IMG/VR virus record: IMGVR_UViG_3300020172_001601 | Location: 62,001-126,000 of that record | DNA length: 64,000 bases | Direction: 5' to 3' (one strand) | Shown: one piece after another, positions 1 to 60,796 of the stretch | Numbering within the stretch: position 1 is the stretch's first letter | Layout: every line of letters starts with the position of its first letter | Translations under genes and position numbers: made by a program | The notes under the pieces: model-generated | Database searches by the model: none | Told to the model about the DNA's origin: nothing | The model's input: the letters and a program-made list of their open reading frames with translations, nothing else

Positions 1-330
1 ACCCAGCTTTCAAAACCTGGGATGCGTGGGAAAAAGCCAGTGAAGAAAACCCACTTTTTGTTCTCAATCTGAAGTGGCCGGAGTTGGGATACACATTGGC
101 CGGATACCTGGGCGATGCTGCCAAGGAACAACCGCCAGCGCCGCCAGCAGGCTTCCAGGACTTGTCCTCGAAGTTCATCCGGGCAGCATCAAACATTCTG
201 TCTTTCAAGGAAATTCCCAAACCCCAGCCTGTGGTCCAAATGACTGATGGCGATGTTCAAAATAAGGTCAAGCAGGCTCTTGATGCCTGCCTTAGAAGGT
301 TACGGGAAGAACGGGAAGACGAAGATATTT
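1..330 (+). CDS. 3' part of a putative prokaryotic E2-like protein (begins before window)
   Basis: Open frame from position 3 reads PAFKTWDAWEKASEENPLFVLNLKW, resembling the C-terminal W..K...NP motif of the E2-like ORFs at 1527, 2639 and 45999. Confidence 0.5.
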
Positions 331-374
331 AATCTGCTTTACAGCCAGACCTATATGGGGTATAATCGGTCATT

Positions 375-1073
375 GTGATCGCACGATATACTCCTGGCAA
401 AGCAAAAGCCATGTTGCTCGAATTAGTGACAATTGAAACACCAGCCGCCTTCAAGGTGGTTAGCAGGGAGGCTATTGATCCGACGAAGTATATTTTCTTG
501 GTCGAAGCGATTGCGCACAAGTTTCGGAAAAGGTTCCGGGGTAAATTCGAGAAGATCGAGGATACCGAGCCATATTCCATTGCTTCAATGGAGTTGGTCA
601 AGGCCGCTGCCGGATACGATCCTGAAGTGAATGAAGACTTTAGCCGGTACGCATTTCGTGCGATGCGAAATGGAATTATCGAAGCCATTCGTCATCGTAA
701 TCGTCAAAAGCGAACTGCTGAATTTGCCAAGTTGACCACTCTTGAGTGGCAAGAATTGCCAGAGAAAGAACAAGTTCTGTCTGCCGATATTCCCTCGGAT
801 GTATATCAGACCTTGATGGCGAATCACCCGGACGATACCGAACAAGATCGTGCTGATAAGGCACTCTTGACGGAAATCTATATCCAGGGCAAAAAGATTC
901 CATTCATTGCGGAGAAGTATGGAATCAGCAGAATGACGGTATACAACCGTCTTCGTCGCATCATTGGAAAAATCCGTCAGCGTCACAGCGACCTGATTGA
1001 GTCACACGGGGGAATACTCGATGAATGTCCTGAAAGAGAGCCTTGTCGTCTTCACCGAAGGGGCGAGGGTTAA
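375..1073 (+). CDS. RNA polymerase sigma-70 family factor
   Basis: Region 2 (LVKAAAGYDPE..FSRYAFRAMRNGIIEAIR) and region 4 HTH (IAEKYGISRMTVYNRLRR). Confidence 0.85.
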   Translation: MIARYTPGKAKAMLLELVTIETPAAFKVVSREAIDPTKYIFLVEAIAHKFRKRFRGKFEKIEDTEPYSIASMELVKAAAGYDPEVNEDFSRYAFRAMRNGIIEAIRHRNRQKRTAEFAKLTTLEWQELPEKEQVLSADIPSDVYQTLMANHPDDTEQDRADKALLTEIYIQGKKIPFIAEKYGISRMTVYNRLRRIIGKIRQRHSDLIESHGGILDECPEREPCRLHRRGEG

Positions 1074-1527
1074 TTTCAAGGTATACGGCCATTTGGTTCC
1101 AGTGTTTGCAGGCTTGCTGGATGGTGAGCCTCAGATATTCGGAGTTGTGTGGGAAGATGCCGCTCAGAAAGAGGCGTTTGCCCGTCAGGTTCGTGATTGG
1201 ATCGCCGCAGATCGTCTCAAGGAATATATCATGGTGGTCGAAGCATGGACCGCCAATATTCCAGAGGGCGACCAGTATAAAGTCCGGGATTGGCTCAAAT
1301 CTCACGGAACCCTGCAAAATTGGCCCGACCGCAGCGAAGTGGTCATGGTCCTATATTGTTCGCCAACCGAAGAAATTGAGTATACAGCAGACATTATTCG
1401 TGGTAGAATCCCGGCACCAATGATCGGGGAATGGAAAATCAGCCAGCGTAAAGTGAAGTTCAACCACGAAGACTTCACTACTCGATTTCAAGGTTTGTTC
1501 CTTAAAAGCAAAGCGGGGCAAAACTAA
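1021..1527 (+). CDS. hypothetical protein
   Basis: ORF with RBS, coupled to next gene. Confidence 0.6.
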   Translation: MNVLKESLVVFTEGARVNFKVYGHLVPVFAGLLDGEPQIFGVVWEDAAQKEAFARQVRDWIAADRLKEYIMVVEAWTANIPEGDQYKVRDWLKSHGTLQNWPDRSEVVMVLYCSPTEEIEYTADIIRGRIPAPMIGEWKISQRKVKFNHEDFTTRFQGLFLKSKAGQN

Positions 1528-2639
1528 TGCCATCACAACAAGAAATCGTCGATGCAGTCGCTCGCCAGTTGAAGGGCAAAGACCTCAGCCAGCAAGCAGT
1601 CATGGTTCTTCAGAAGGCTACGGCACGGGTGCTTGAGCGAATCAAGCAGAACGTCGATGCCCAAATCAAAGAAGACTCTTCGCCCATCGTTGAGAAGTTC
1701 GTCAAGAATGCCGCCACGAAAATGTCGGCAATGACCCAGCAATGGGCCGATGGCGTCAAGAATGATCTTGTCGTATTCCCGGAAGGAACTCGATATATTT
1801 GGCGTGATGGTCAAATGACAACCATCATCGTTGAGCAGCAGCCGCAGGTTCGCCATATCAACGTCTATGGCAAGATTTACTTGCTGTCGCTGCCATACGT
1901 CCAGTTCATCATGACGTTCAAGAACCACCAGTTGACACAATCTCTTCGGGTGACTTGCACCAAGAAACCAATCACTGATCTCGATCAGGCGGCGAACTTT
2001 CTCCCATTGGGAAATATCGACGCAAGCCACCAAGTTTGCATGGGTAGTTTCCGGTGGCCGACGACCGGCACTATGACCGATATTGTGAACGCTGTTATTG
2101 GTGAATTCTGGCAAGGCCAGTTCAACTACGATAACGGTGGGAATATGTTGGAATTTTTCACCGAAAACTTCGGCGTTAAGACGCATTCACGAGAAGAAGT
2201 GCATCCTGGTTTTGTGGCTTGGGCGAAGAAGACCCAAGAGAACGCTTTGTATGCTACCGAGCGTACAACCAAGTTGAAGCCCGGTGCTACCTTCCGTCGA
2301 TTCTTGGCGACTGATAGCGGCGACAAGAATGGGTCGCAGTCCATTGTCAATAACCTCAAGCAAGAAATCATCACGGCGGTTGGAGCCATCGGTGGCGATA
2401 TTCAATCCCTGTTGACCGCAGTGGACTTGGCTACTGAAAACCGTGAGAAGGCTCATGTTGAAACTCTCCAAGGCGTTCTGAAGGAAATCATTGTTCAGGC
2501 ATATGCTGAACTGTGGGAATACTTGCAGAAGCAACTTCAGGATGAGCGTGCCAAGCTGCAAAAGGAAATGCAGGAAGCCGCCAACAAGCTGAAGAATGAT
2601 TTCGTGTATTACATGGACCAAAAGAAAAAGGTGTGGTAA
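1527..2639 (+). CDS. prokaryotic E2 (Prok-E2_D/PRTRC-B-like) conjugating-enzyme fold with coiled-coil extensions
   Basis: LPYVQF...LPLGNIDASHQVCMG...EFWQGQFN motif with putative catalytic Cys; operon with JAB, E1, Ubl. Confidence 0.7.
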   Translation: MPSQQEIVDAVARQLKGKDLSQQAVMVLQKATARVLERIKQNVDAQIKEDSSPIVEKFVKNAATKMSAMTQQWADGVKNDLVVFPEGTRYIWRDGQMTTIIVEQQPQVRHINVYGKIYLLSLPYVQFIMTFKNHQLTQSLRVTCTKKPITDLDQAANFLPLGNIDASHQVCMGSFRWPTTGTMTDIVNAVIGEFWQGQFNYDNGGNMLEFFTENFGVKTHSREEVHPGFVAWAKKTQENALYATERTTKLKPGATFRRFLATDSGDKNGSQSIVNNLKQEIITAVGAIGGDIQSLLTAVDLATENREKAHVETLQGVLKEIIVQAYAELWEYLQKQLQDERAKLQKEMQEAANKLKNDFVYYMDQKKKVW

Positions 2640-3679
2640 TGGCCAATATCCAGGATACGATCCGTCGTATTCAGGAGGAAGCGAAACGCACGGTCGAGGC
2701 TGCTCGTTTTAGCAAAAGCAAGCCGCCGATTCCCAAGGTCGCTGTTACTCCTGTCGCAAAGGTTCCCACGACTGATGAAGTCGTGGCGAGCCTTCGTGAG
2801 CAGCTTTCTACGGCTATCGCTCAAGCATTGTCCACCAAGGCTGCACGCCGTTATATTGGCGACGTGACGGAAGAATTACAGGATATTGCTGCCGAAGCTA
2901 TTGAGAGCGCTCGGAACACAACCGACTTTGGTGGTGCTGTTAAGACTGGTGATAAAGTCATCATCTATCCCAACAATTGCAAACTTCTTGTGCAGAACGA
3001 GAATGGTCGTGGGTCTTTCATTATTGAGGAAGCCCCTCAATATCGAACAGTATTGACTCATAGTGGGCGAAAGCCACAGACCTATCGTATTCCCATGCCA
3101 TACATGGTTTACCTGATTGGTTTCCAATACCAAGGTGGTGAATATTACCATGCTGGTTCCGGTATTGGTTTTGGGAAAGAGCCGATTGATTCGATTGACA
3201 CTCGGATGCTTATGCCAAAGTTGCCGCACACCCAGGGCAATATGCACATTTGTCAGCCGATGAATAAAACCAATCACAAGACCGTAAAAGAGTTGGGCGA
3301 ATATGTAGTTCAGACGTTTTGGAGTACCATCTTCCATTACTCGTTTGCACACTCACGTTGCCAATTCAAAGTCGATGGCAAGAGCATCAACAGTTTTGCT
3401 GATTGGGCTAAGATCAAAAATCCTCTTGATATTCTCAAGGGCGATTTTGAGCGGGGACAATCCGTTCAAGAAGTTTTGGGCCACTTTGGTCAAGTACAAG
3501 AGACTCGTGGAACCAATACTGCCAATCACAAGATTCAGTCAGCGGTAACTCGTGTTGTAAACGGTGTCAACAGAAGCCTTTCGGCTGAAGAATTGTCGGA
3601 TGTTATTCGCAGGACGGCAGAAGAAATCGTCAATGTTGCACTTCAAAATGCCATTGGCGATTCTGCTTTACAGCATTGA
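2639..3679 (+). CDS. second prokaryotic E2 family D-like protein
   Basis: MPYMVY...PKLPHTQGNMHICQP...TFWSTIFH parallels preceding ORF. Confidence 0.6.
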   Translation: MANIQDTIRRIQEEAKRTVEAARFSKSKPPIPKVAVTPVAKVPTTDEVVASLREQLSTAIAQALSTKAARRYIGDVTEELQDIAAEAIESARNTTDFGGAVKTGDKVIIYPNNCKLLVQNENGRGSFIIEEAPQYRTVLTHSGRKPQTYRIPMPYMVYLIGFQYQGGEYYHAGSGIGFGKEPIDSIDTRMLMPKLPHTQGNMHICQPMNKTNHKTVKELGEYVVQTFWSTIFHYSFAHSRCQFKVDGKSINSFADWAKIKNPLDILKGDFERGQSVQEVLGHFGQVQETRGTNTANHKIQSAVTRVVNGVNRSLSAEELSDVIRRTAEEIVNVALQNAIGDSALQH

Positions 3680-3754: not shown

Positions 3755-4678
3755 ATGGCAGACCAACCTCCTGTTCCCCTCGCACTGTTTCCGGTGTATT
3801 TGTTCGATCATGAATTCGAGCCGCCGAAGACGGGAACGTATTATCTCGTCACCAAGACGGGCATCTATCTGCACAAAGAAACCAAGGCGGGCAATGCACT
3901 CGTCAAGGTCGAAGGTATTCCTTGGTTGCAAGAGCCGACCATTGAATTCCGTCTCAAGCTGCCGAAGATTCCGGGGAGCATCATCGGTCAGGCCCTTACC
4001 TTCTTTCGGAAGGTGTTTCAACAGTACAAGTCCGAAGCGTATGTGACGCTTTTGTACAGTGCCAAGTTGAATCAATATCGTCTCTGGTGTCCGGCACAGA
4101 AGGTGTCCGCTGCCAGCGTCAACTACGACCGCACCGACCAGCCTTCGTTCGAGGATCGTCAGTCCAACGATTGGCAGATGTGTGGCACGATTCACTCGCA
4201 CTGTGACTTCAGCGCCTATCACTCCGGCACGGATATTGGCGACGAAGCCAGCTTCGACGGTATCCACATTACCCTGGGCCACGTCAATCGGGCGCAGTTC
4301 AGTATGGAAGCCAGTGTCGCCATCAACGACAAGCGTGAGAAGTTGGAACCAGAAAACTGCTGCTCCGGCGTTATCCGGGTTTCCAACAAGGAAGTTGTTT
4401 CTCGCCCATACATGACCTGGGGTGAAAGTTGCTTCTTCGATCTCGAATTGTCGGAAGAAGACGCACAACAGCTTGTTGCTGATACGGCCATCATCAACGC
4501 CGAGTGGATGCCCAAGGTCGAACACAATGGCTGGCAGGGCAACCAGATGGGCTTCTACGGTGGTGGAGGCAACTGGAAGGGCAAGGGGTCAAAAAAAAAC
4601 GGAAACGATGATCTCTTCGACCAAGGCCCCGATGAAGGTACTGCCGACTGGTGGCGAAATCAGAATTTCATCGACTAA
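3755..4678 (+). CDS. JAB/MPN (Prok-JAB) metalloprotease, deubiquitinase-like
   Basis: SEA upstream Glu and GTIHSHCDFSAYHSGTDIGDE (HSH..S..D) JAMM motif. Confidence 0.9.
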   Translation: MADQPPVPLALFPVYLFDHEFEPPKTGTYYLVTKTGIYLHKETKAGNALVKVEGIPWLQEPTIEFRLKLPKIPGSIIGQALTFFRKVFQQYKSEAYVTLLYSAKLNQYRLWCPAQKVSAASVNYDRTDQPSFEDRQSNDWQMCGTIHSHCDFSAYHSGTDIGDEASFDGIHITLGHVNRAQFSMEASVAINDKREKLEPENCCSGVIRVSNKEVVSRPYMTWGESCFFDLELSEEDAQQLVADTAIINAEWMPKVEHNGWQGNQMGFYGGGGNWKGKGSKKNGNDDLFDQGPDEGTADWWRNQNFID

Positions 4679-4767: not shown

Positions 4768-5538
4768 ATGGCAACAAAGAAGGCGGCGAAGGACGAATCA
4801 CCCGTCGCCAAGAAGCCGCTCAAGATTAAGGTGATTGGAACGGGCGGCATCGGCCTTTGCCTGCTTCCTTCGCTCTGTCGATACCTCAACTATAACGGCG
4901 AGAAATATCCCGCCGTGGAAGTGAGCCTGATCGACGGCGATACGTTCGAGGAACGCAATCGTGAGCGACAGGACTTTGTTGAGACGGGGCCGAAGGCGTC
5001 CATGACCGCTGCCGAATATCGGGGCAAATTCCCACGACTGATGTTTTGGGACCATCCGGTATACGTCGCCGATCACAACGTCATTCAGTTGATTCGGGAG
5101 AACGATATTGTTCTTCTCTGTGTGGATAATCACAAGACCCGCAAGCTGATTAGCGACCGGGCCGAAGAACTGAAGAATGTTACCGTCATCAGTGGCGGCA
5201 ACGATTGGACTGATGGAAACGTGTTGCTTCATATTCGACGGGATGAGAAGAACCTGACGCCACCTTTGGCGAGCAAGTTTCACCCGGAGATTTTGAATCC
5301 GACCGACGAGAACCCTGCCGACGTGGAACAGAAGGCAGAAGGTTGTGCAGAGTTGGCTGTTGCTGCACCGCAACTGCTGATTACGAACAACTACATTGCC
5401 GCCAACATGCTGGCGGGACTGTACAACGTGATTGACGAAGGGCGATACGAGAAGGTTCTCGCCGCTCCGCACAATTTCGCAGAGGTCTACTGTGATCTCT
5501 CCGTGATGAAGTCCATCCCACGAGAACGCAAGGTGTAA
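4768..5538 (+). CDS. ThiF/E1-like ubiquitin-activating enzyme
   Basis: VIGTGGIG, IDGDTFEERNRERQ, CVDN, GGND, putative catalytic GCAE, PQLLITN. Confidence 0.9.
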   Translation: MATKKAAKDESPVAKKPLKIKVIGTGGIGLCLLPSLCRYLNYNGEKYPAVEVSLIDGDTFEERNRERQDFVETGPKASMTAAEYRGKFPRLMFWDHPVYVADHNVIQLIRENDIVLLCVDNHKTRKLISDRAEELKNVTVISGGNDWTDGNVLLHIRRDEKNLTPPLASKFHPEILNPTDENPADVEQKAEGCAELAVAAPQLLITNNYIAANMLAGLYNVIDEGRYEKVLAAPHNFAEVYCDLSVMKSIPRERKV

Positions 5539-5603: not shown

Positions 5604-5936
5604 ATGGCTCAAGAGCAGAAAAAGCCGGGTGGTGGGTTTTCCAACAAGAAGGCGTCGAGCGAGACGCAGTTACCACAAGGTCAGACCAGCGCCCCAAGCG
5701 CTCAGGATGCCTTGGCAAAGCTGGACGCAGCCGTGAAGGTCATTCACGGTGCCAACGACGGGTCGTTCAATCTGGCTGGATCGAAGGTTTCGACCGTTCG
5801 AGCCTCGCTGGTGGACGCCTTCAATATTCCCGGTGACGCTCAAACCTTCGTCAACGGCGAACAGGTCGATGCCAACTACACGCTCCAGAGCAACGACACT
5901 CTGGAATTCGTGAAGCAGGCTGGAGTCAAGGGTTAA
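5604..5936 (+). CDS. prokaryotic ubiquitin-like (beta-grasp) protein
   Basis: VNGEQVDANYTLQSNDTLEFVKQAGVKG C-terminus ending in Gly; disordered N-terminal ~40 aa. Confidence 0.85.
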   Translation: MAQEQKKPGGGFSNKKASSETQLPQGQTSAPSAQDALAKLDAAVKVIHGANDGSFNLAGSKVSTVRASLVDAFNIPGDAQTFVNGEQVDANYTLQSNDTLEFVKQAGVKG

Positions 5937-13661: not shown

Positions 13662-13738
13662 GAGGTTGTGTTCGTCTAGTGGTCTAGGATGCCGTCGTTG
13701 AAGACGGCGACATGGGTTCAAATCCCATACACAATCTC
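13662..13738 (+). ncRNA. Glu-like tRNA body with 6-nt anticodon loop
   Basis: CCGTC-GTTGAA-GACGG; extended acceptor GAGGTTGTGT/ACACAATCTC. Confidence 0.65.
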
Positions 13739-13835: not shown

Positions 13836-13906
13836 GATTCGGGTTAGTGTAACGGTAGCACGGAGCCGTCAAAGGCTCCAGAGTGGTTCGACTCCACACC
13901 CTTATC
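13836..13906 (+). ncRNA. tRNA-like RNA, short anticodon loop (TAGTGTAACGGTAGCACG family)
   Basis: GGAGCC-GTCAAA-GGCTCC; T arm present. Confidence 0.6.
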
Positions 13907-13913
13907 ACAATAT

Positions 13914-14406: not shown

Positions 14407-15154
14407 ATGGTGCGTCTTTGGCTCGAAACTGTGCGGATTTAGACCAACAGGTAGGTTACACCTGGGGCATTACTTCTCGGTGATTCAACCGGGACAAGCT
14501 GGGTGTACCGTACTGGTGGCAAACTATCATGCACCGGAGGTAAAGAATCTGGAAGTATCCGTGAACGCCTTACGGCAATACGGTGTCCAGACCATAGTGA
14601 TTCAGAAGGACGTGTTTGACGCTGAGTTGTTCTTCCGACTATTGACGCTCGCTAAAATGGGCGACTTGAGCCGGATGACACAATTCAAGTCAACAGAAGA
14701 GGACGATAGGACTGGCCAATTGTTGACCTACCCTGTTCTCATGGCGCATGATGTTGCGGGTTACTCCGAAGTCATTGTGGGCCTGGATCAGAAGCAGCAT
14801 TTGGAATATGCCAGAAAGCTGTTGAGAAAATACAACAGTGTATATGGCACGACATATCCAATCCCGATAGCGAATATCGTGGTGGGACGTGTCAAAGATT
14901 TGCGTGACCCGACGAAGAAAATGTCGAAGTCATCACCACAAGGATGTTTATTCCTTGATGATAAGGTTGATGATATTCAACAAAAGATTCGGAAAGCGAC
15001 CGCAGATGAAGAGGGCCTGAATAACTTGAAGTTTTTGTATGGGGAGTTTGTAAGAGAAACGCCTCCAACAAGTAATCAAGAACTAAAAGAAAAGCTGGCC
15101 GATGGTTTGGTGAAATGCTTTGCAAGCTGTAGTGGCACAGCATCCGGCTCTTAA
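14407..15154 (+). CDS. trpS: tryptophanyl-tRNA synthetase (compact), requiring +1 frameshift at 14416-14421
   Basis: GFRPTGRLHLGHY, YPVLMAHD, VGLDQKQHLE, KMSKS; the SD-associated ATG (14407) is out of frame with the catalytic ORF. Confidence 0.85.
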
Positions 15155-39528: not shown

Positions 39529-40437
39529 ATGAACATCACACGCATTGCTCCGTCGCCGACCGGCGATATGCACATTGGCACTGCCAGAACCGCATATTTC
39601 AACTGGCTCGCAGCACGGGCCAGCGGTGGTAAGTTCATTCTTCGGGTGGACGACACCGATCAGAAGCGAAACGATCCAGCCTATACAGAAGTCATTCTGT
39701 CCACAATGAAGTGGCTAGGTTTGGACTACGATGAGATCGTCTTCCAGAGTTCCAGATTCGACGTATACAAGGCCGCAGCGGGCTTGTTGATCCATGAAGG
39801 CTGGGCCGTTCCAAAAGATGGAGCCACGGTTTTTAACTTGAAGAAGGACCATGTTTTTCCTTCTCATTGGAAGGACGAAATCAAGGGCGACATCAAGATC
39901 AGCGATGATGACATATCCCATATGGATGGGATGGTTCTCATTAAGTCTGATGGGAGTCCATCTTATAACTTTTGTTCGATTGTTGATGATTTGCACATGG
40001 GGGTCAACCTAATCATCCGTGGAGTGGATCATATAACAAACACAGCAAAGCAGGTGATGCTTTGGGATGTCCTCAATAGCGGACAGACGATACCAAGGTT
40101 TGCCCACCTGGGTCTTATTTGCATTGATGGAAAGCCTATGTCCAAAAGAGACGGGGCATCGAGCATGTTGAATTACATGAACGCCGGATATGATTCCGAC
40201 GCCATGTTGAATTTTCTTGCACGCCTTGGTTGGGGGCCAACAAAGGACGACAAGTCCACAACCCTATTGCCGAGAGACAAGATGCTTGAAATGTTTCTAA
40301 CTTCGGGTAAGATGAGGAGTCAGCCAGCTAGTTTCGATTCTGGCAAATTGGAGTCGTTCGACCGCAAGTACAAGGCCCGTAAGGGGACTTGGCGAACGGG
40401 CGACAAGTTGATTTCTGACACTAACAAAGAGGCATAG
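39529..40437 (+). CDS. glutamyl-tRNA synthetase family protein lacking anticodon-binding domain
   Basis: RIAPSPTGDMHIG, LRVDDTD, IIRGVDH, KPMSKRDG; only 302 aa. Confidence 0.85.
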   Translation: MNITRIAPSPTGDMHIGTARTAYFNWLAARASGGKFILRVDDTDQKRNDPAYTEVILSTMKWLGLDYDEIVFQSSRFDVYKAAAGLLIHEGWAVPKDGATVFNLKKDHVFPSHWKDEIKGDIKISDDDISHMDGMVLIKSDGSPSYNFCSIVDDLHMGVNLIIRGVDHITNTAKQVMLWDVLNSGQTIPRFAHLGLICIDGKPMSKRDGASSMLNYMNAGYDSDAMLNFLARLGWGPTKDDKSTTLLPRDKMLEMFLTSGKMRSQPASFDSGKLESFDRKYKARKGTWRTGDKLISDTNKEA

Positions 40438-42034: not shown

Positions 42035-42370
42035 CATGCCAAGGGCGTCTTGGATTCATCGTGTTGATGCCCGCCGATTTCATTCGGCGGCAAGAATGAT
42101 GGAAGACGATTTGGAAGGTGCCTACTTGACCTGTAGGGAAAAGTACGGTGCAGAAGTGGCTGGAGTAGTGTTGGTCACAATACTCCGACAAAAATTGAAC
42201 AACAATCAAGACCAATGGCCTCCACCGGAAGACCTTATTCGCAAGGTGAACAACTTTCTCGTGGAACACGGCTTAATGATTGATTGAATTTGTTGACTGG
42301 ATGTGGGGTGCGAACCTCACCATGACATAGTGTGTCTGGTCAAATAACTCGAAAGGCAATGGTGATTACG

Positions 42371-44077
42371 ATGGCTAACAAGAATCTATTCAAGTCTGAG
42401 CGTGGCTCAATTGTTCCAGCAACGGACGTTCTCAACGAAGCTGGTGGTGTTGCATACAAGATGAGTGCAAAGCAGGCCCTTGCGCAGTACGTCTGCACTG
42501 GCTGCTTGAACGGCACCTACTACACGTCTGCCAAGACGCAACTGGACACTGTTCGTCAGTTGCTTACTGAAGTCGAGCCTGAGTTCCTTGGTCAGTTGGC
42601 TGTGTACTCGCACGAAAAGTCCTTCATGAAGGACTTGCCTGCTCTGTTGGTCGCATTCCTCGCATCCGACAAGGGTGCTGGTGGTGGTCCAACTACGGCT
42701 ACGCAGGAGCGAAAGCTGAAGACGCTCCGTAAGGTTTTCCATCGTGTCATCGACAGCGGCAACATGCTGCGCAACTTTGTGCAGATGATCCGTTCGGCAG
42801 CATTCGGTCGCAAGTCATTCGGTGAAGTGCCTCGCAAGCTGATTCGTGACTGGTTCGAGAATAAGTCTCCGGCTGGTATTTTCTTCCAGAGCATTGGCAA
42901 TAGCCCATCCCTGGCAGATATTATCAAGCTGACCAAGCCGAAGCCGAACACGCCTGAAAAGGCGGCTGTATTGGCGTATCTGCTTGGTGCAGAAACCGTT
43001 GACGGCGAAGATGGCAAGTTGCTTGTTCGCAAGTATCTTGACCGTGCCGACAAGCAGGTGAAGGTTGCGTACTCGCAGCCTTACGACAACCTGCCGGAAA
43101 TCATTCGTGAATACGAAGCGTGGAAGAAGGACAAGAGCCTCCCGGTTCCTGCCATCAACTTCCGCTTCCTGGACAACGAGAAGCTGTCAACTGCTCAGTG
43201 GGCAGATATTGCTTCCAAGGCAAACTGGCTTACGACCCTGAAGAACCTCAACGCATATGCCGACCACGGCGTATTCGGCGTTGAAGGCATGACTGACATG
43301 ATCGCCGCACGTCTCAGCAATGCTGATGAAGTGCGTAAGGTTCGGGTATTCCCATACCAGATCATGATGGCCTACCTCGCAACCGATACGGAAGCGAAAG
43401 TACCGCCCAAGGTCCGTAACGCCATTCAGGATGCTATGGAAGTGGCATGTGAAAACGTACCAGCGTTGGGAAAGGTTAAGTTCTTCCCGGACGTGTCTGG
43501 TTCGATGAGGAGCGCTGCTATTACGGGCGACCGTGGTTCGGCGACTTCTAAGGTTCGGTGTGTTGACGTGGCTGCTCTGTTCGCAGTGGCAATGCTTCGT
43601 CGCAACCCGGAAGCGGAAGTAATTCCGTTCGAGCAGACGGTTCGTGAACTTACACTGAACCCTCGTGACAGCATCATGACCAACGCTACTCGCCTCGCAG
43701 CGATTGGCGGTGGTGGAACCAACTGTTCGGCCCCACTTGCTTTGCTCAACGCAAAGAAGGATTGGTCGGCAGACGTGTTGGTGTATATTTCGGACTATGA
43801 GTCCTGGGTGGATAGCACTGGCTACCACGCTGGTAATGGCAACGGTACAGCACTGCTCAATGAGTGGGTGAAGTACAAGAGCCATAACAAGAATGCCAAG
43901 CTGATTTGCATCGACTTGACCCCTCGTGCAAACCATCAGGTCAAGGAACGTGATGATATTCTCCAGGTCGGTGGATTCTCGGACAACGTATTCAACGTGA
44001 TCGCAAGGTTCGTTGAAGGCGGCTGGTCGAAGGATTTTTGGGTCAAGGAGATTGAAAGCGTTCAACTGGATACTTAA
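42371..44077 (+). CDS. rsr: Ro60/TROVE domain RNA-binding protein with vWA domain
   Basis: NEAGGVAY, TGCLNGTYY, LKNL, VFPYQ, MIDAS DVSGSM, GGGTNCSAPL, ISDYESW. Confidence 0.9.
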   Translation: MANKNLFKSERGSIVPATDVLNEAGGVAYKMSAKQALAQYVCTGCLNGTYYTSAKTQLDTVRQLLTEVEPEFLGQLAVYSHEKSFMKDLPALLVAFLASDKGAGGGPTTATQERKLKTLRKVFHRVIDSGNMLRNFVQMIRSAAFGRKSFGEVPRKLIRDWFENKSPAGIFFQSIGNSPSLADIIKLTKPKPNTPEKAAVLAYLLGAETVDGEDGKLLVRKYLDRADKQVKVAYSQPYDNLPEIIREYEAWKKDKSLPVPAINFRFLDNEKLSTAQWADIASKANWLTTLKNLNAYADHGVFGVEGMTDMIAARLSNADEVRKVRVFPYQIMMAYLATDTEAKVPPKVRNAIQDAMEVACENVPALGKVKFFPDVSGSMRSAAITGDRGSATSKVRCVDVAALFAVAMLRRNPEAEVIPFEQTVRELTLNPRDSIMTNATRLAAIGGGGTNCSAPLALLNAKKDWSADVLVYISDYESWVDSTGYHAGNGNGTALLNEWVKYKSHNKNAKLICIDLTPRANHQVKERDDILQVGGFSDNVFNVIARFVEGGWSKDFWVKEIESVQLDT

Positions 44078-44631: not shown

Positions 44632-45486
44632 GTGATCCCCGTCAAAGAAGACAAACTCCGACCAGTCCTGGCCACAATGACAGGGACCAGAGCCGAAGGC
44701 TTGCTTAGGTTCCACGACGATCACATCAGCGAAATCTTATCTGCCAAAGGCTCATCGGGCGGCAATCATCAAGCCTGGAGCGGCGGTCTTCACGACCATC
44801 TTGTGCATTGCTTTGTATTAGCACAAGACCTCTATAAGCTCTTTCATGAGCGTATCGGCCCTGGTCCTCATGCCGGGCAACTCATCAATGGCGTGTACGA
44901 TCCACGTCCAATCCCGTTTTCTCTTGAAAGCGCAATCATTGTGCTTTATTTTCATGACATAGAGAAAATCTTCAAATACGGAAACAAGCCAGAGCGTTAT
45001 CCTCAGCGGCTCATTGAAGCTAAGGACGCATGGTATCTTGGTATTTTGCCAACCAAATACGGTATTGTATTTGACGATCAAGAATATAACGCATTGAAGT
45101 ACGCCCACGGCGAAGGCGATGACCATCGTAAAGATCAAAGAGTTGCCAGTCCCTTGGCGGGCTTCATTCATGCCATAGATTATCTATCGGCACGAGTTCT
45201 GTGGCAGATCAAAGATTTTGATTATGGTCTGGTCCCCAGGGAGCCAGTCTTGCCAGAAGCCGTTCAGAGCCTTCATTCCACTTGCTGTAAGGCAGTGGGC
45301 AAGCGTGTTAGGTACACCGGCACCAATGGCGATGAATACGACAAAATCAGGCATGGCCTCTTTGTCGAGGGCGAAGGGTTGTGTACAGAGCAACATGACA
45401 GTCATGGACTGTGCATTATTGTTCAGCACGATGATCGCACTACCATTTGTGTTGATCCCATTACCGTCGAAATTCTCGGTGACTAA
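44632..45486 (+). CDS. HD-domain phosphohydrolase
   Basis: HQAWSGGLHDH, YFHDIEK, YAHGE, IHAIDYLS. Confidence 0.75.
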   Translation: MIPVKEDKLRPVLATMTGTRAEGLLRFHDDHISEILSAKGSSGGNHQAWSGGLHDHLVHCFVLAQDLYKLFHERIGPGPHAGQLINGVYDPRPIPFSLESAIIVLYFHDIEKIFKYGNKPERYPQRLIEAKDAWYLGILPTKYGIVFDDQEYNALKYAHGEGDDHRKDQRVASPLAGFIHAIDYLSARVLWQIKDFDYGLVPREPVLPEAVQSLHSTCCKAVGKRVRYTGTNGDEYDKIRHGLFVEGEGLCTEQHDSHGLCIIVQHDDRTTICVDPITVEILGD

Positions 45487-45998
45487 TGTTTAAGATCAAG
45501 CATGATTCTTTTGTCTATATTGACGACGCAAAGCGTATTGGCGAATGTCGCTATGACGTTATTGCAACTATTGATTCACGATGGATTGTGGTGTTCACGG
45601 AATTGTTGAAGAATCCAGGGCCGAGCGTCACAAACGCTATTGAGTCTATTGTTCCACAATTTTGCCGATGCACTAGCCTCAAGCCAGAGGAAGTGATGTT
45701 TATTGAGCGATACCAAACACATCCAGATGATCTTGATGTGATAAACTATCAGCCCGATGGCACAACGAGTTGGAGTAGGCTTCCAGAAGATCAAGCTCGT
45801 CCAATCTTGGAGTTGCTATGATTCCGTTGCCGGTAATAAAAGTGGACTATCCTTTGTCTGTGGTTCCGGCGTGGTGCCGGATGCCTATTGAATATCACCA
45901 AGATGGCATTGGTGGTTGTTGGGGAATCTATCACGGGGAAGTGGCAAAATATGGCGAAGCGCATTGCCAAACTTGCGAGTATAAAGCCGCAAGTACAA

Positions 45999-46613
45999 AT
46001 GATCGAAAGTAATTTCTCTCCCATGTACAACGAAGGCGTTACTGTTATTTCACAGCCGCCCACTCGTCGTATTGTTCAAATCAATATGGAGTATCGTGGT
46101 GATGATGAAGACGAAGAGGGATACAACGGAAACTTCTTCCTGAGTTTTCCCTTGATGTATTTTCGTATTCAATACAAAAGATACTTTGAGAAAAACAAAG
46201 AACAATTTGTTGCATCGTCGCTTCACGTCATTTTTGCTGTTGCCGACAACAAAAGCAAAGCATTCATTCCACCACTTCCAAATGTTGACGACTCGATGCG
46301 AGTTTGCATCGAGTTGCCAAAGAAGCGATTTTCAAATATTGACGACCTCTACAAAGAGGTTATTGCTTGCTTTTGGTCAACAGACTTCAATGATGGAATG
46401 TACGACGCTTACGAACAATATGATTGGGAATCCTTGTTGGGCGATCACCGTAAATGGCAAAAGAAAACAAAGAAGCAGCCCACCTGGATTCCAAATGGTC
46501 GCAGCTTGAAGCCAATTGAAAATTTCGACAAGAAGTTTTTCTATGGAGCGTCCTTCAAAAAGAACATCCAGCCAGAAGACTGTTCCGATGACTACGACGA
46601 CGATGGTTACTGA
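45999..46613 (+). CDS. orphan prokaryotic E2 family D-like protein
   Basis: LSFPLMYF..PPLPNVDDSMRVC..FWSTDFN..WQKKT. Confidence 0.6.
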   Translation: MIESNFSPMYNEGVTVISQPPTRRIVQINMEYRGDDEDEEGYNGNFFLSFPLMYFRIQYKRYFEKNKEQFVASSLHVIFAVADNKSKAFIPPLPNVDDSMRVCIELPKKRFSNIDDLYKEVIACFWSTDFNDGMYDAYEQYDWESLLGDHRKWQKKTKKQPTWIPNGRSLKPIENFDKKFFYGASFKKNIQPEDCSDDYDDDGY

Positions 46614-46671: not shown

Positions 46672-49233
46672 ATGGGTTCGTTCAAAGATACGCTGCAACT
46701 CCCGAAAACCGATATGCCCATCGCTGCCAACTTACCGGCCAGCGAACCCGCCGTTTACGCATCCTGGGGCAACGTCTATTCCCGCTTGAAGCGAGACGGG
46801 AAGAACCCTTTCATTCTTCATGATGGCCCGCCGTATGCTAACGGCGATATTCATATCGGCCATGCTCTCAATAAAATCCTCAAAGACTTCGTTGTGAAGT
46901 TCCAATACTTCAACGGGCGAGCCGTCGAGTTTGTCCCCGGCTGGGACTGTCACGGACTTCCGATTGAATCGAAGGTTTATTCCATCATCCGAGTTGGCGG
47001 CGGCAATCCCAGCAAAGAGCCGTTGGAATTAGTCCAACGCATGTGTCGGAAATATGCCGGTGAGCAAATTGCTAAACAAAAAGAGCAATTTCAAACCCTG
47101 GGCGTAATCGCCGATTGGGAAAACCACTACGAGACGATGAGTCCGTGGTTTGAAAACATGATCTCTCAGCGACTTGCTGAATTGCGGGATCATGGATATT
47201 TGGTTCGCCGCAAGAAGCCTGTCTATTGGTCTTGGTCTTATGGCACTGCACTGGCTGAGGCAGAAGTCGAATATCGTGACCGAGTAGATAATTCGGTGTA
47301 TGTCGTATTCAAAACTGATAAGTTCCCTTGGGGGCTTTTGGTTTGGACCACAACGCCGTGGACACTTCCGGCCAACGTCGCCGTGGCATTGAACCCCAAG
47401 ATGAAATATCTTGCTGTTCGTGTGCGAGATTACAATCTCCCCGTGCTAGTAGCTGCCGATCTTGTCAAGACCTTGACAGATAAAGGAATCATTGAGCATG
47501 TCTTTGACCTTTATAGTGCGCAAGGCGACGAGTTCAATGGTTGGCAATTTCAACATCCTGTTTATCCCGACCAAACCGTGCCGTGCGTAATGGCCGACTT
47601 TGTGTCCGCTGATAGCGGCACTGGTTGTGTACATATCGCCCCTGGTCATGGAGAAGAAGACTATCGAGTAGGGTTGGCGAATAATCTTCCGGTCGTCATG
47701 CCTGTTGACGGAACGGGCAGATACACCGAGGGCAAATACGAAGGTCAATGGATTTTTGATGAAACTGACGGTTCGTATAAAGAATACAACTCGAATCCCA
47801 ATATCCTTGCTGATTTAAGGGAGCGTGGTCTATTGGTTCATACTGAGAAGATCACTCACAGCTATCCCTATTGCAGCCGATCTGGAACGCCGGTCATCTT
47901 CCGTGCTACTGAACAGTGGTTCTTGGACTTGGACAAGATTCGCAATCTGATCTTGGGGCCGATGACTGCTATTGAGAATGTGCAGTTCTATCCAGAGCAT
48001 TCCAAGAACCGTATGGTTCCGATGCTGGAGAACCGCCCTGACTGGTGCATCAGTCGCCAGCGAGTATGGGGCGTGCCGATCTTTGAAGGACCGGACATTC
48101 TTGACGTATGGTTTGATTCAGGATTGACGTGGAACATCCTGGGAGATCGTCAGGCTGACGTTTATCTGGAAGGCAACGATCAGCACCGTGGATGGTTCCA
48201 GAGCAGCCTATGGCTGTCTGTGGCCCTTCAGGGCGTTGCGCCATACAAGAAGGTCATCACGCATGGCTTTGTTGTCGATCAAGACGGCAAAAAGATGGCT
48301 AAGTCCAAGGGCAATGTCGTGTCGCCATTGGAAGTGACTCAAAAGCAGGGAGCAGAAGTGCTTCGCTATTGGGTTGCGAGCATTGACTATACGAAGGATG
48401 CGCAGTGCAGCCCGGAGATCATGAAGCGTGCTGCCGAGGGCCACAAGAAACTTCGTAATACTTTCAGATTCCTAGTGGCAAATATGCCCAAGGAATCTCC
48501 GTATAAGAACGACCAGAATATGGTTTTCCTGCCGGTCAATCGTTGGATTTACGAAAAGACTCAGAAGGTCTTTTCTGAAGTCCATCAGTTGTTTGCCGAC
48601 AACCTGTTCCATGCTGGTCTGCAAAAGTTGACGGAGTATATCAATACTGATTTGAGCGGTATTTACATGAACGCCGTCAAAGACTGCTTGTATTGTGATG
48701 CTGTCGATAGTGTGTCCCGAAAGAATGTTGTTCACGTCATGAGTAAAATCCTCAAGGCGATGATGACGCTTGTGGCTCCGTTGTTTACCTACACGGCGCA
48801 GGAAGTGTTCAATTATTGTCCTGAATGGGTGAAGGGTGACGCCAAGGATATTTTCGATCTTCAATACGAAGCATTGCCAGACTTGCCGCCACACTTGGCT
48901 CGGATGGACGAAGCGTATTGGAAAGAGGCGTTGTCCGCATTCCATACTGAGTTCGACAAGATCAAGACCGCAGGCAAGGCTCGTGATACTTTGGAAGTCG
49001 TTATTGAATCGACTTCTGGTGATACGTTCTTTGTCGGGGCTGAAGATTGGTTTGTCGTAAGTCATTGGGCATCACATCCTTCAACCTGTGAGGCCCTGGG
49101 GGAATTCTCGGTGGGCGACAAGGTTTATCGGATTGTCAAGAGTCAGAAGAATAAGTGCGAACGATGCTGGAAACGCAATGCAGAACAGGAGTTATGTCCT
49201 CGCTGTCTCGGTGTGGTGAATCCGCAGGTTTGA
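46672..49233 (+). CDS. ileS: isoleucyl-tRNA synthetase
   Basis: HDGPPYANGDIHIGH, WTTTPWTLP, DWCISRQR, KMAKS, C-terminal CERC Zn finger. Confidence 0.97.
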   Translation: MGSFKDTLQLPKTDMPIAANLPASEPAVYASWGNVYSRLKRDGKNPFILHDGPPYANGDIHIGHALNKILKDFVVKFQYFNGRAVEFVPGWDCHGLPIESKVYSIIRVGGGNPSKEPLELVQRMCRKYAGEQIAKQKEQFQTLGVIADWENHYETMSPWFENMISQRLAELRDHGYLVRRKKPVYWSWSYGTALAEAEVEYRDRVDNSVYVVFKTDKFPWGLLVWTTTPWTLPANVAVALNPKMKYLAVRVRDYNLPVLVAADLVKTLTDKGIIEHVFDLYSAQGDEFNGWQFQHPVYPDQTVPCVMADFVSADSGTGCVHIAPGHGEEDYRVGLANNLPVVMPVDGTGRYTEGKYEGQWIFDETDGSYKEYNSNPNILADLRERGLLVHTEKITHSYPYCSRSGTPVIFRATEQWFLDLDKIRNLILGPMTAIENVQFYPEHSKNRMVPMLENRPDWCISRQRVWGVPIFEGPDILDVWFDSGLTWNILGDRQADVYLEGNDQHRGWFQSSLWLSVALQGVAPYKKVITHGFVVDQDGKKMAKSKGNVVSPLEVTQKQGAEVLRYWVASIDYTKDAQCSPEIMKRAAEGHKKLRNTFRFLVANMPKESPYKNDQNMVFLPVNRWIYEKTQKVFSEVHQLFADNLFHAGLQKLTEYINTDLSGIYMNAVKDCLYCDAVDSVSRKNVVHVMSKILKAMMTLVAPLFTYTAQEVFNYCPEWVKGDAKDIFDLQYEALPDLPPHLARMDEAYWKEALSAFHTEFDKIKTAGKARDTLEVVIESTSGDTFFVGAEDWFVVSHWASHPSTCEALGEFSVGDKVYRIVKSQKNKCERCWKRNAEQELCPRCLGVVNPQV

Positions 49234-59146: not shown

Positions 59147-60796
59147 ATGAACGAATTCCATATTTCGGAAAAAGACAACAACACCACGTTCGTCACAACG
59201 GCGATTGATTATCCGAACGCTCTGCCACATATCGGCACAGCATTCGAGAAGATCGGCGCTGACGTATACGCCCGGTTCCGTCGTTTCCAGGGTCGTGATG
59301 TATATTTCACGATGGGCAACGACGAGAACACTGTGAAGGTTCTCAAAGCAGCAAAAGCCGTAGACAAGCATCCTCAGCCATATGTCGATGAAATGGCCGA
59401 TGCGTTTAAGGCTGTGTGGAAAGAACTCAACATTTCCTTTGACGACTTCATTCAGACCAGTGAAGATCGACACCTGTTGGGTGTTCAGAGATTCCTGCGT
59501 GCTGTGAATTCCGCTGGTTATATTGAGAAGCGACCATACAAGGCTTTGTATTGTGAGGGCTGTGAAGAGTTCAAGAGTCCAAATAGCTTGGACTATGCAA
59601 AGCGATGCCCGAACCATACTGGCACACCTTTGGTGGAACGGGAGGAAGAGAATTACTTCTTTCTTCTGTCTGCATTCAAGCAGCGTGTGGCTGATTTGAT
59701 TTATCCCACTCCATTCCTCACTGCCTTCCTGAGTATTGAGCCTGAGTCTCGCTACAACGAAGTCACTAAGTTCATCGACACGGAACTGACGGATATTTCC
59801 ATCAGTCGCCGTAATGAAGGCTGGGGCATTCCAATTCCGTGGGACGACACCCAAGCCACCTATGTCTGGTTCGACGCTTTGTTGAACTATTTGACTGTGA
59901 TTGGTTTTGGGAACGATTGGGAGAAATTCCAAAAGTATTGGCCTGCTGAAGTTCACTTCATTGGCAAGGACATTACTCGGTTCCACTGTGCATTGTTCCC
60001 GGCAATGTGCATGGCCTATAACGAAGGATGTGATAAGCTGGGTGAGCCTCAATACAAGTTGAAGGCTTTTCCTCAGCGTGTATTTGCACACGGCTTCGTC
60101 AATCAAAAGAAGGGAAGTCAGGTTGTCAAGATTTCCAAGAGCGGAGATTCAATCCGACCTGGAGAACTGATTGAGCAGTTCGGGTCGGATGCGTACAGAT
60201 ACTATTTCTTGTCGAAGTTCAACTACGATACGGACGGTGAATATAGCCTGGACCACTTTAGAGAAGTGTATAACGCCGACCTCGCCAACTCCTTGGGCAA
60301 CCTTGTGAGTCGCACCGTAGGAATGTCGTTGCAGTATTTCGACGGGAAGATTCCACCGATGGTCGCAGAAGGCCAGCCTTGGCTTGATGAGAAGACGGCG
60401 TTGGAATACGAGCAATTTATTGTTGATTGTTGTTCGTATCGGCACGCTATTGAATGGACGTGGAAGATCATCTTCAACGCCAACAAGTTGATCGAGAATT
60501 CAAAGCCGTGGGAATTGGTTAAGTTGCCCGGCAACACCTGTGGTCAGGTGTTGGGCCAACTTGTGGGCAGTCTGAGAATCATCAGTCTGTTGATCCGACC
60601 GTTCACGCCAGCGGTGGCCGAGAAGATTTACACGACGTTTCAGTGGGCTGAAGGATGGAATGAAGTTGATTGGGAGTTCGTTAAGAAGTTGGCGACGAAC
60701 AACTTCCTGGGACTCGAAAACGGTATTGCCATCAACAGGAATGTTTTAGATAATGCTGGAAAGTTTCCGGTGCTTTTTCCGAGAGTCAAATCATGA
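59147..60796 (+). CDS. metG: methionyl-tRNA synthetase
   Basis: TTAIDYPNALPHIG, ISISR..WGIP, YVWFDAL, IGKDI, KISKS, LANSLGNL. Confidence 0.96.
   Translation: MNEFHISEKDNNTTFVTTAIDYPNALPHIGTAFEKIGADVYARFRRFQGRDVYFTMGNDENTVKVLKAAKAVDKHPQPYVDEMADAFKAVWKELNISFDDFIQTSEDRHLLGVQRFLRAVNSAGYIEKRPYKALYCEGCEEFKSPNSLDYAKRCPNHTGTPLVEREEENYFFLLSAFKQRVADLIYPTPFLTAFLSIEPESRYNEVTKFIDTELTDISISRRNEGWGIPIPWDDTQATYVWFDALLNYLTVIGFGNDWEKFQKYWPAEVHFIGKDITRFHCALFPAMCMAYNEGCDKLGEPQYKLKAFPQRVFAHGFVNQKKGSQVVKISKSGDSIRPGELIEQFGSDAYRYYFLSKFNYDTDGEYSLDHFREVYNADLANSLGNLVSRTVGMSLQYFDGKIPPMVAEGQPWLDEKTALEYEQFIVDCCSYRHAIEWTWKIIFNANKLIENSKPWELVKLPGNTCGQVLGQLVGSLRIISLLIRPFTPAVAEKIYTTFQWAEGWNEVDWEFVKKLATNNFLGLENGIAINRNVLDNAGKFPVLFPRVKS

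What the first reader, a model, noticed from the sequence alone, without database searches (positions are those of the whole stretch)
45999..46613. E2-like paralog expansion: four E2-like genes for one E1/Ubl
Seen: besides the two operon E2s, ORF 45999 (FPLMYF..PPLPNVD..RVC..FWSTDFN..WQKKT) and the truncated ORF at 1-330 (WDAWEKASEENP) share the same motif series. Inference: a hierarchical cascade where different E2s with distinct helical extensions supply substrate specificity without E3 ligases.
Basis: inference. Interest (0 to 1): 0.65.

Follow-up and report, generated by a model that had tools for sequence, protein, structure and literature searches.

The report
Expanded E2-like gene family in huge phage
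A 340-kb phage carries at least seven diverged copies of a ubiquitin-conjugating-enzyme-like (E2-like) gene, all keeping the catalytic cysteine, but only one activating enzyme (E1), one ubiquitin-like protein (Ubl) and one JAB peptidase; related huge phages carry from 1 to over 40 copies.

Summary
The ORF at 45999-46613 (more likely starting at 45951) shares a significant motif series with the two operon genes E2a (1527-2639) and E2b (2633-3679). It also shares it with the ORF cut by the window start, which is the tail of a 366-aa gene.

A profile of these four finds three more copies elsewhere in the 340-kb virus record. That makes seven E2-like genes against one ThiF-type E1, one JAB peptidase and one Ubl ending in Gly.

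The family is a diverged, mostly phage-borne branch of Prok-E2_D (PRTRC protein B):
- hhalign probability 90.7%, with Cys and Asn aligned;
- ESM Atlas shape match TM 0.61 to a Prok-E2_D cluster;
- PDB fold search topped by UBC/UEV chains, but at low Z.

Cys103 is kept in 163 of 164 family members. Each of the seven copies has its own orthologues.

The cassette E2-like / JAB / E1 / Ubl recurs in other contigs. Complete huge phages with the same E1 carry 1, 9 and at least 41 copies.

That the stand-alone copies are charged by the single E1, and choose targets without an E3, remains inference. ORF 45999 itself has no long helical extension.

The parts
45951..46613 (+). E2c: stand-alone E2-like (Prok-E2_D-like) gene. 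Active-site loop LPN(95)...C(103); acidic C-terminal tail.
   Evidence: ORF and motifs. Start. Eleven orthologues at 40-85% identity. AF2 model pLDDT 85.7. UBC/UEV chains top the PDB fold search at low Z. Atlas TM 0.61 to a Prok-E2_D cluster. hhalign to PRTRC_B.
3..332 (+). C-terminal 109 aa of paralogue UP (366 aa; the gene starts 769 bp upstream of the window, at genome position 61232). Only the last motif and the C-terminal helix lie in the window.
   Evidence: N-terminal DUF2934 hit. Orthologue P0013 at 59% identity, syntenic after an NAD-ligase gene.
1527..2639 (+). E2a: long E2-like paralogue (370 aa), core residues about 85-265, with N- and C-terminal helical extensions.
   Evidence: Pfam Prok-E2_D 18 bits, E 0.0025; TIGR03737 PRTRC_B E 0.029. 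AF2 core confident. Orthologues at 55% identity.
2633..3679 (+). E2b: long E2-like paralogue (348 aa from GTG 2633, or 346 aa from ATG 2639). Its loop reads LPH...C, with His in place of Asn.
3755..4678 (+). JAB/JAMM metallopeptidase (307 aa) with an intact HxH-x7-S-xx-D motif (HSHCDFSAYHSGTD).
   Evidence: Prok-JAB E 2.9e-5. PRTRC_A E 1.5e-7. Only copy in the genome.
4768..5538 (+). ThiF-type E1 (256 aa; the ORF opens at GTG 4723 but homologues start at 4768). It has a GTGGIG loop and a near-invariant Cys193.
   Evidence: ThiF E 1.9e-12. PRTRC_ThiF E 1.5e-14. Only ThiF match in the genome. 898 homologues. Conservation.
5604..5936 (+). Ubl (110 aa): low-complexity N-terminus, then a core of about 66 aa ending in ...FVKQAGVKG-stop.
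   Evidence: 45% identity, E 2e-18, to the 68-aa gene after ThiF in L016. C-terminal FV[KR]xAGxKG shared with PRTRC protein C; some homologues carry short tails after the Gly. Weak TGS/ThiS hits. Single copy.
997..1527 (+). Conserved gene of unknown function (about 170 aa) directly upstream of E2a. It is present at the same place in orthologous operons.
   Evidence: No family hit. No similarity to PRTRC protein E.
375..1073 (+). Sigma-70/ECF-type sigma factor gene between UP and the cassette.
   Evidence: TIGR02937 E 3e-15, above its cut-off.

Best explanation
ORF 45951/45999-46613 encodes a stand-alone UBC-fold protein. It belongs to a diverged, mainly phage-borne branch of the Prok-E2_D (PRTRC protein B) family. 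It is one of at least seven ancient paralogues in this huge phage.

Shown:
- The seven are homologous.
- The LPN...C loop and its Cys are kept in all seven and in nearly the whole family.
- The family's usual genomic partner is a cassette of JAB, ThiF-E1 and a Gly-terminated Ubl.
- This genome has one such cassette.

Inferred:
- The single E1 adenylates the Ubl C-terminal Gly and passes it as a thioester to Cys103 of E2c and the equivalent Cys of the other paralogues.
- Each paralogue, through its own variable surface or extensions, hands the Ubl to a different phage or host target.
- JAB matures the Ubl or removes it from targets.
For: - Paralogy.
- Family-wide conservation over 165 sequences: Cys103 in 163/164, Arg24 in 163/163, Pro51 in 163/163, Trp126 in 165/165, Asn95 in 142/164.
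- Link to Prok-E2_D: hhalign against three annotated PRTRC_B / E2-family-D proteins gives probability 72.7% with 18 sequences and 90.7%, E 1.2e-6, with 165. Cys aligns to Cys and Asn to Asn.
- Pfam: borderline PF14460 hits up to 25.0 bits in family members.
- ESM Atlas: shape match TM 0.61 over 162 residues to a cluster that is 85% PF14460. 29 of 30 named feature hits are PF14460 clusters.
- PDB fold search: UBC/UEV/RWD chains take at least 12 of the top 20 ranks.
- The cassette E2-like / JAB / ThiF / small Ubl recurs in unrelated contigs.
- One E1, one JAB and one Ubl in this genome. The JAB motif and the E1 Cys are intact.
- Each paralogue has its own orthologues at 53-87% identity and its own clade, so all seven are maintained by selection.
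- The N-to-C spacing of eight residues in LPNVDDSMRVC equals that of HPN...C in UbcH5. This rests on my own knowledge of that sequence, not on a test here.
Against: - No biochemical data exist for any PRTRC-type E2.
- ORF 45999 has no Pfam, NCBIfam, PHROG or PADLOC hit of its own.
- PDB fold matches are weak: best Z 5.4, below the tool's usual noise level. Foldseek found nothing.
- The His that Iyer et al. 2006 (PMC1779556) call absolutely conserved after the Cys in this operon class is not conserved here.
- E2c lies 44 kb from the cassette, so a link to that E1 rests on co-occurrence only.
- The short copies lack the N-terminal helix that canonical E2s use to bind E1 (own knowledge).
Confidence: 0.5

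Rival explanations
1. Decoys or inhibitors. Instead they engage host E1/E2-based immune pathways (CBASS Cap2, Bil, Bub), for example by trapping host Ubl or E1 on their Cys, and diversify in an arms race.
For: - Fast-diverging tandem arrays: at least 41 copies at 24-52% nearest-neighbour identity in G003.
- Lineage-specific copy sets: no 1:1 orthologues between G000 and G002 or G003.
- Both patterns fit anti-defence gene families (own knowledge).
- The copies are dispersed away from the cassette.
Against: - Every phage examined with copies also has the cognate E1 and Ubl. This sample was selected through the E1, so the point is weak.
- The copies are no closer to known defence E2s: no PADLOC hit.
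- They share family-specific invariant residues with the operon E2s.
Confidence: 0.15
2. Cys-dependent enzymes with another chemistry. The fold is E2-like, but the family, including PRTRC protein B, does not carry a Ubl thioester. The Cys serves a different reaction or a redox or metal role.
For: - No PRTRC-type E2 has been assayed. The literature searches found only annotation mentions.
- The invariant Arg24 and Trp126 have no counterpart that I know of in canonical E2s.
- PDB similarity is low.
Against: - The persistent neighbourhood with E1, JAB and a Gly-ended Ubl is the signature of Ubl transfer.
- The LPN...C loop mimics HPN...C.
Confidence: 0.15
3. Non-catalytic UEV-like adaptors that bind the Ubl or its conjugates.
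For: Eukaryotic UEV and RWD domains appear among the fold matches.
Against: UEVs have lost the Cys. Here it is kept in 163/164 family members, all 7 local copies and 40/41 G003 copies.
Confidence: 0.08
4. Chance motif resemblance, or a non-coding ORF.
For: None found.
Against: - HMM and BLAST statistics.
- Eleven orthologues with conserved motifs.
- A confident fold.
Confidence: 0.01

Closest known systems
Prok-E2_D (Pfam PF14460) / PRTRC system protein B (TIGR03737); operon class 6d of Iyer, Burroughs & Aravind 2006 (PMC1779556)
   Same: - Same fold class, with aligned Cys and Asn and the P-x-x-x-R strand motif.
- Same partners: ThiF-type E1, JAB and a small Ubl ending in ...AGxKG.
- Atlas shape and feature matches.
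   Different: - Scores are below the curated cut-offs: 0 bits for E2c and 18 bits for E2a, against 25; PRTRC_B 13.7 against 131.
- The conserved His after the Cys is absent. The family has its own invariant Arg24, Pro51, Trp126 and Trp153.
- No ParB or PRTRC E/F genes lie beside the cassette.
- It sits in a phage rather than a plasmid or ICE.
- It is multi-copy (7 to 41 or more), whereas each of the three plasmid cassettes inspected shows a single such gene.
Canonical eukaryotic E2 (UBC fold)
   Same: - Beta-meander, then an xPN loop, then Cys eight residues after the Asn, then a crossover helix.
- One E1 serving many E2s is the eukaryotic logic.
   Different: - No sequence-level match: the PDB profile search is empty at E 10.
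- Best Z is 5.4.
- Leu replaces the His of HPN.
- The strands are longer and more numerous.
- The short copies have no N-terminal helix.
Bacterial Ubl-conjugation defence systems: CBASS type II Cap2/Cap3, Bil, Bub
   Same: E1 + E2 + JAB-type peptidase + Ubl or Ubl-like target logic. CdnG-E2 and BubCD chains appear among the weak fold matches.
   Different: - No PADLOC model matches any component.
- E1 and E2 are separate small proteins.
- The system is encoded by the virus, not the host.
- The E2 is expanded into a multigene family.

Membership tests
Prok-E2_D (PF14460) / PRTRC protein B | Score above the curated family cut-off | tested here: not met
   E2c has no hit at E<=1. E2a scores 18 bits against a cut-off of 25, and PRTRC_B 13.7 against 131. 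Some family members reach 24-25 bits. 6 of 18 alignment members hit weakly.
Prok-E2_D (PF14460) / PRTRC protein B | Profile-level homology, with the family's conserved Cys aligned | tested here: met
   hhalign against three annotated PRTRC_B / E2-family-D proteins: probability 72.7% and 90.7%, E 1.2e-6. Cys103 aligns to their Cys and Asn95 to their Asn.
Prok-E2_D (PF14460) / PRTRC protein B | Same three-dimensional fold as family members | tested here: met
   E2c model against an ESM Atlas cluster with PF14460 in 85% of members: TM 0.61, 162 residues, rmsd 3.7. Both sides are predicted models.
Prok-E2_D (PF14460) / PRTRC protein B | Absolutely conserved His C-terminal to the Cys (Iyer et al. 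2006, class 6d) | tested here: not met
   The invariant His192 of the PRTRC_B alignment falls on Tyr135 of E2c when the hhalign register is extended. No His column exceeds 60% in the 165-sequence alignment.
Prok-E2_D (PF14460) / PRTRC protein B | Gene neighbourhood with ThiF-E1, JAB and Ubl | tested here: inconclusive
   Met for E2a and E2b (adjacent) and for family members elsewhere. E2c itself lies 44 kb away, between a gene with no family hit and IleRS.
PRTRC system (ParB-related, ThiF-related cassette) | Full set: ParB-family protein, proteins A, B, C, E and F, and ThiF | tested here: not met
   A, B and ThiF are recognised only below cut-off. C is recognised only through its C-terminal motif. 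No E-like protein is found. ParB and F were not found beside the cassette and were not searched for genome-wide.
Canonical UBC/E2 superfamily | UBC fold with a catalytic Cys after an HPN-type loop | tested here: inconclusive
   UBC/UEV/RWD chains fill at least 12 of the top 20 PDB matches, but at Z 4.1-5.4. Foldseek finds none and the sequence profile finds none. The LPN-x7-C spacing equals HPN-x7-C (own knowledge). No residue-level structural alignment was available.
Canonical UBC/E2 superfamily | Forms a Ubl~Cys thioester when given E1, Ubl and ATP | not testable with these tools
   This needs biochemistry. The one complex prediction gave no verdict.
Known anti-phage Ubl systems (CBASS-Cap2/3, Bil, Bub) | Match to the system's protein models | tested here: not met
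   No PADLOC hit for E2c, E2a, E2b, UP, JAB, E1 or Ubl at E<=0.01.

The most novel reading that the evidence does not exclude
Huge phages run their own ubiquitin-like conjugation system. One E1/Ubl/JAB cassette feeds a rapidly diversifying set of virus-encoded E2 enzymes: 7 here, 9 and at least 41 in two complete 0.5-Mb phages. Each E2 tags a different host or phage protein without an E3. This would be a viral, prokaryote-level parallel to the eukaryotic one-E1, many-E2 architecture.
Probability: 0.35. Interest if true: 0.85.

Novelty: new variant of a known kind. Interest (0 to 1): 0.62.

Why it matters
The protein family (Prok-E2_D) and its cassette were predicted in 2006 but remain uncharacterised. 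The known working bacterial Ubl systems (CBASS, Bil, Bub) are host defences with one E2 each.

Here the cassette sits in a virus, and its E2 component is a maintained multigene family. Copy number scales from 1 to over 40 among related huge phages while E1 and Ubl stay single.

If the copies are active, phages would be using protein tagging with a built-in specificity library. That gives a concrete, testable entry into what huge phages do with their large accessory genomes. It also gives an independent example of E2 diversification outside eukaryotes. I found no paper describing this. The library searched is not exhaustive.

Tried and rejected
- Foldseek against the PDB with the E2c model: nothing at E<=0.001; the top rows were unrelated.
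- PDB sequence-profile search with A2: no hit at E<=10.
- VIA-align search with the full-length E2a model: swamped by long-helix matches, so uninformative for the core.
- Complex prediction of E1 (A6) with E2c (A2): score 0.26, below the mark of 0.32. This is no verdict and is not evidence either way.
- The search for related loci with alignment A2: no stretch conserved enough to search with. Single-protein scans of viral contigs with E1 and E2a found no relatives. The E2c scan found one 78.6-kb fragment with a single copy.
- tblastn of E2c against GenBank phages: no match. E1 hit only distant ThiF genes in Bacillus jumbo phages and a few others.
- The 223-kb JGI contig carrying an E2c orthologue could not be searched whole. 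Only synteny around the gene was seen.
- PHROGs and PADLOC: no family for any E2-like copy, JAB or Ubl.
- The 176-aa operon protein against PRTRC protein E: no similarity.
- Ubl against PRTRC protein C by BLAST: only the nine C-terminal residues match, E 0.029, so that homology is suggestive only.
- Chance resemblance and non-coding ORF were considered and rejected.
- A UEV-like pseudo-enzyme was rejected because the Cys is retained.

The reads tools were not used. No alternative genetic code was needed.

Full report
SETTING. The window is bases 62001-126000 of a single-contig IMG/VR virus record of 340,341 bp. The record is linear, and CheckV estimates it about 69% complete. The same E1 protein also occurs on a 390-kb contig. 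Nearly all genes lie on the + strand. The window holds 49 tRNA genes. It also holds IleRS, MetRS, a GluRS-like gene, a Trp/Tyr-RS-like gene, a T4 gp32-like protein, an SPFH protein, an M16 peptidase and a Ro60-type vWA protein. This is a huge phage of the kind that carries translation genes.

THE OBSERVATION. It aligns with the two operon proteins E2a (1527-2639) and E2b (2633-3679) through four blocks: a strand motif h-x-h-P-Y/L-h-h-F, a loop L-P-N...h-C, a helix ending F-W-x-S/T-x-F, and W-x-K.
- Pairwise BLASTP E-values are 6e-6, 3e-7 and 8e-6.
- The 5'-open ORF at 3-332 is only the tail of a 366-aa gene that begins 769 bp upstream of the window. The complete gene (UP, L001:11232-12332) has the whole motif series.
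- The focal gene most likely starts at ATG 45951. Orthologues share the MAKRIAKL N-terminus, and a purine-rich GGGGAAG sits 8-14 nt upstream. ATG 45999 has neither.

GENOME-WIDE COUNT. An HMM built from the four proteins and run against all 3,219 stop-to-stop ORFs of at least 50 aa found three more copies.
- They lie at genome positions 230898-231503, 186851-187531 and 180438-181199, with E 4e-14, 5e-12 and 1e-10. The next ORF scores E 0.4.
- A second round with seven seeds found nothing new.
- The genome has one ThiF match, one Prok-JAB match and one copy of the Ubl.
- So the ratio is at least 7 E2-like : 1 E1 : 1 JAB : 1 Ubl.

WHAT THE PROTEINS ARE.
- Library scans. E2c has no hit of its own in Pfam, NCBIfam, PHROGs or PADLOC. 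E2a hits Prok-E2_D at 18 bits and PRTRC_B at E 0.029.
- Family size. An exhaustive profile search found a large family: 2,606 cluster representatives at E<=1e-3 and 1,334 at E<=1e-10. Members are about 200 aa, about 350 aa, or 700-880-aa fusion forms. A few of these reach the Pfam Prok-E2_D cut-off (24-25 bits).
- Conservation. In a 165-sequence domain alignment, Cys103 is kept in 163/164, Arg24 in 163/163, Pro51 in 163/163, Trp126 in 165/165, Asn95 in 142/164 and Trp153 in 158/162.
- Profile comparison. I took three annotated PRTRC_B / 'prokaryotic E2 family D' genes from plasmids, found through the E1. Profile-profile comparison gave 72.7% probability with 18 sequences. It gave 90.7% and E 1.2e-6 with 165 sequences. 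In both, Cys103 and Asn95 lie on the PRTRC_B Cys and Asn.
- Structure model. The AF2 model of E2c is confident (pLDDT 85.7, pTM 0.82). It shows a long beta-meander, the loop carrying LPN and Cys103, then a helix at 114-127 and further helices.
- PDB fold searches. Foldseek found nothing in the PDB. An exhaustive alignment to 48,161 PDB representatives put UBC, UEV and RWD-type chains in at least 12 of the top 20 places. These include UBE2W-like, UbcH7, UBC9, UBE2G2, UBE2T, UbcH5c, Ubc13/Mms2, a Leishmania E2, CdnG-E2, the VPS37A UEV domain and the FANCL central domain. They score only Z 4.1-5.4, which on its own is within that tool's noise.
- ESM Atlas. The shape search matched phage clusters at TM 0.67-0.71. 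It matched a bacterial cluster in which 85% of members carry PF14460 at TM 0.61 over 162 residues. The feature search returned PF14460-bearing clusters in 29 of 30 named hits.

They fail two formal membership criteria. Their scores fall below the curated cut-offs, and they lack the His that Iyer et al. describe as absolutely conserved after the Cys in this operon class (PMC1779556).

THE CASSETTE.
- Downstream of E2b lie three genes. The first is a JAB peptidase with an intact HxH-x7-S-xx-D motif. The second is a ThiF-type E1, closest to the PRTRC ThiF model, with a near-invariant Cys193. The third is a 110-aa Ubl whose 66-aa core ends in ...FVKQAGVKG.
- The order unknown / E2a / E2b / JAB / E1 / Ubl is reproduced in orthologous phage contigs. 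One of them also has UP after an NAD-ligase gene, as here.
- More distant members keep the triplet E2-like / JAB / ThiF, followed by a small ORF. This holds in a phage-like contig and in one that looks cellular.
- Some Ubl homologues carry a few residues after the Gly, which would need trimming. That is a job expected of JAB (inference).

THE PARALOGUES ARE OLD AND MAINTAINED.
- The seven are 16-24% identical to one another.
- Each has its own orthologues in metagenomes: UP 59%, E2a 55%, E2b 53%, E2c 87%, and the other three 74%, 68% and 62%.
- In a FastTree of the 165 domains, UP, E2a, E2b and E2c each sit in a separate clade with 96-97% local support.
- E2c's neighbourhood (GluRS-like ... 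Ro60-vWA ... 111-aa gene, then E2c) is syntenic in a 223-kb relative.

BEYOND THIS GENOME. An E1 profile found 93 IMG/VR contigs. I searched the ten largest with the family profile.
- A complete 277-kb phage has one copy, an 835-aa fusion.
- Six incomplete records have 1-2 copies each.
- A complete 527-kb phage has 9.
- A complete 572-kb phage with terminal repeats has 27 by the tool's first look.
- In 12 stretches fetched from that 572-kb genome, my HMM finds 41 ORFs of 140-260 aa. Seventeen of them sit in one 13.5-kb tandem array. Forty of the 41 keep the Cys, and nearly all keep the Arg and Trp.
- Nearest-neighbour identity among those copies is only 24-52%. They are not 1:1 orthologues of the copies in the present genome.
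- Each of the two 0.5-Mb phages has one cassette-type E1 and one Ubl, plus one unrelated ThiF gene.
- This sample was chosen through the E1, so it cannot show that copies never occur without it.

HOW IT MOST LIKELY WORKS. The steps above are shown. What follows is inference. The E1 adenylates Gly110 of the Ubl and transfers it, possibly through E1 Cys193, to the Cys of each E2-like protein. The divergent surfaces of the short copies, or the helical extensions of the long ones (low confidence outside the core), select different targets. JAB matures the Ubl or reverses the modification.

The conserved Cys across fast-diverging copies argues for catalysis rather than a UEV-like role. I put about 0.5 on 'active E2 served by the phage E1'. 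I put less, about 0.35, on the full picture of E3-free target diversification.

Three rivals remain: decoys aimed at host E1/E2-based immunity, a different Cys chemistry, and non-catalytic adaptors. The single complex prediction allowed (E1 with E2c) gave no verdict and is not used as evidence.

COMPARISON AND NOVELTY. The closest known kind is Prok-E2_D / PRTRC protein B and its cassette, which is predicted but never characterised. It works like an E1-E2-DUB-Ubl system, but it is not a member of CBASS, Bil or Bub. Four things are new:
- the viral location;
- the family-specific signature (Arg24, Pro51, Trp126, no post-Cys His);
- the absence of the family from PHROGs;
- above all, the expansion of the E2 component to 7-41 copies per single E1/Ubl.

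Full-text searches found no description of this. That library lacks most subscription journals.

VERDICT. This is a new variant of a known kind, with interest 0.62.

Noticed in passing
G003 = IMGVR_UViG_3300015615_000629 (572 kb); loci L102-L113, especially L102:669-13414: Tandem arrays of short (140-260 aa) E2-like genes. At least 41 copies lie in the fetched regions, 17 of them in one 13.5-kb stretch. Nearest-neighbour identity is 24-52%, and 40 of 41 keep the Cys. The complete 527-kb phage G002 has 9 copies.
   Followed up: partly
window 10800-39233: 49 tRNA genes called by ARAGORN, all on the + strand. They include duplicated isoacceptors and two calls with odd two-base anticodons (13664-13738 and 13836-13908).
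   Followed up: no
window 14480-15154, 39529-40437, 46672-49233, 59147-60796: Four aminoacyl-tRNA-synthetase genes or fragments: a short class-I W/Y-type (224 aa), a 302-aa GluRS-like catalytic core without an anticodon-binding part, a full IleRS (853 aa) and a MetRS (549 aa).
   Followed up: partly
window 42332-44077: A Ro60/TROVE-type vWA protein (581 aa), conserved in the same position in a related 223-kb contig. Ro60-like proteins bind misfolded non-coding RNAs, and this one sits next to the tRNA and aaRS region.
   Followed up: no
window 45818-46012: A 64-aa Cys-rich ORF whose ATG overlaps the stop of the 111-aa gene at 45486-45821 (ATGA), and which overlaps the 5' end of E2c. In the relative L012 the E2c orthologue instead starts directly at that ATGA junction, so this small ORF may not be a gene.
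   Followed up: partly
L001:11232-12332 (UP), residues 27-61; also L012:18907-19209: A DUF2934 module (28 bits, above its cut-off) at the N-terminus of the UP paralogue. The same domain occurs as a free 100-aa gene in a related phage contig.
   Followed up: no
window 375-1073: An ECF/sigma-70-type sigma factor gene sits between UP and the E2a-E2b-JAB-E1-Ubl cassette. A gene of similar size (219 aa) occupies the same place in relatives L020 and L021. It may drive timed expression of the cassette.
   Followed up: no
L016:8001-12201 (JGI contig Ga0172381_10000052, 121 kb): A 720-aa protein with the E2-like domain at residues about 400-580, followed by JAB, ThiF and a 68-aa Ubl. The surrounding genes look cellular rather than viral. 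The N-terminal 400 residues have no Pfam match.
   Followed up: partly
G002:C1:218386-219120 and G003:C1:280080-280484: Each of the two 0.5-Mb phages carries a second ThiF-family gene away from the cassette, and it scores better against Pfam ThiF than the cassette E1 does. Its role was not examined.
   Followed up: no
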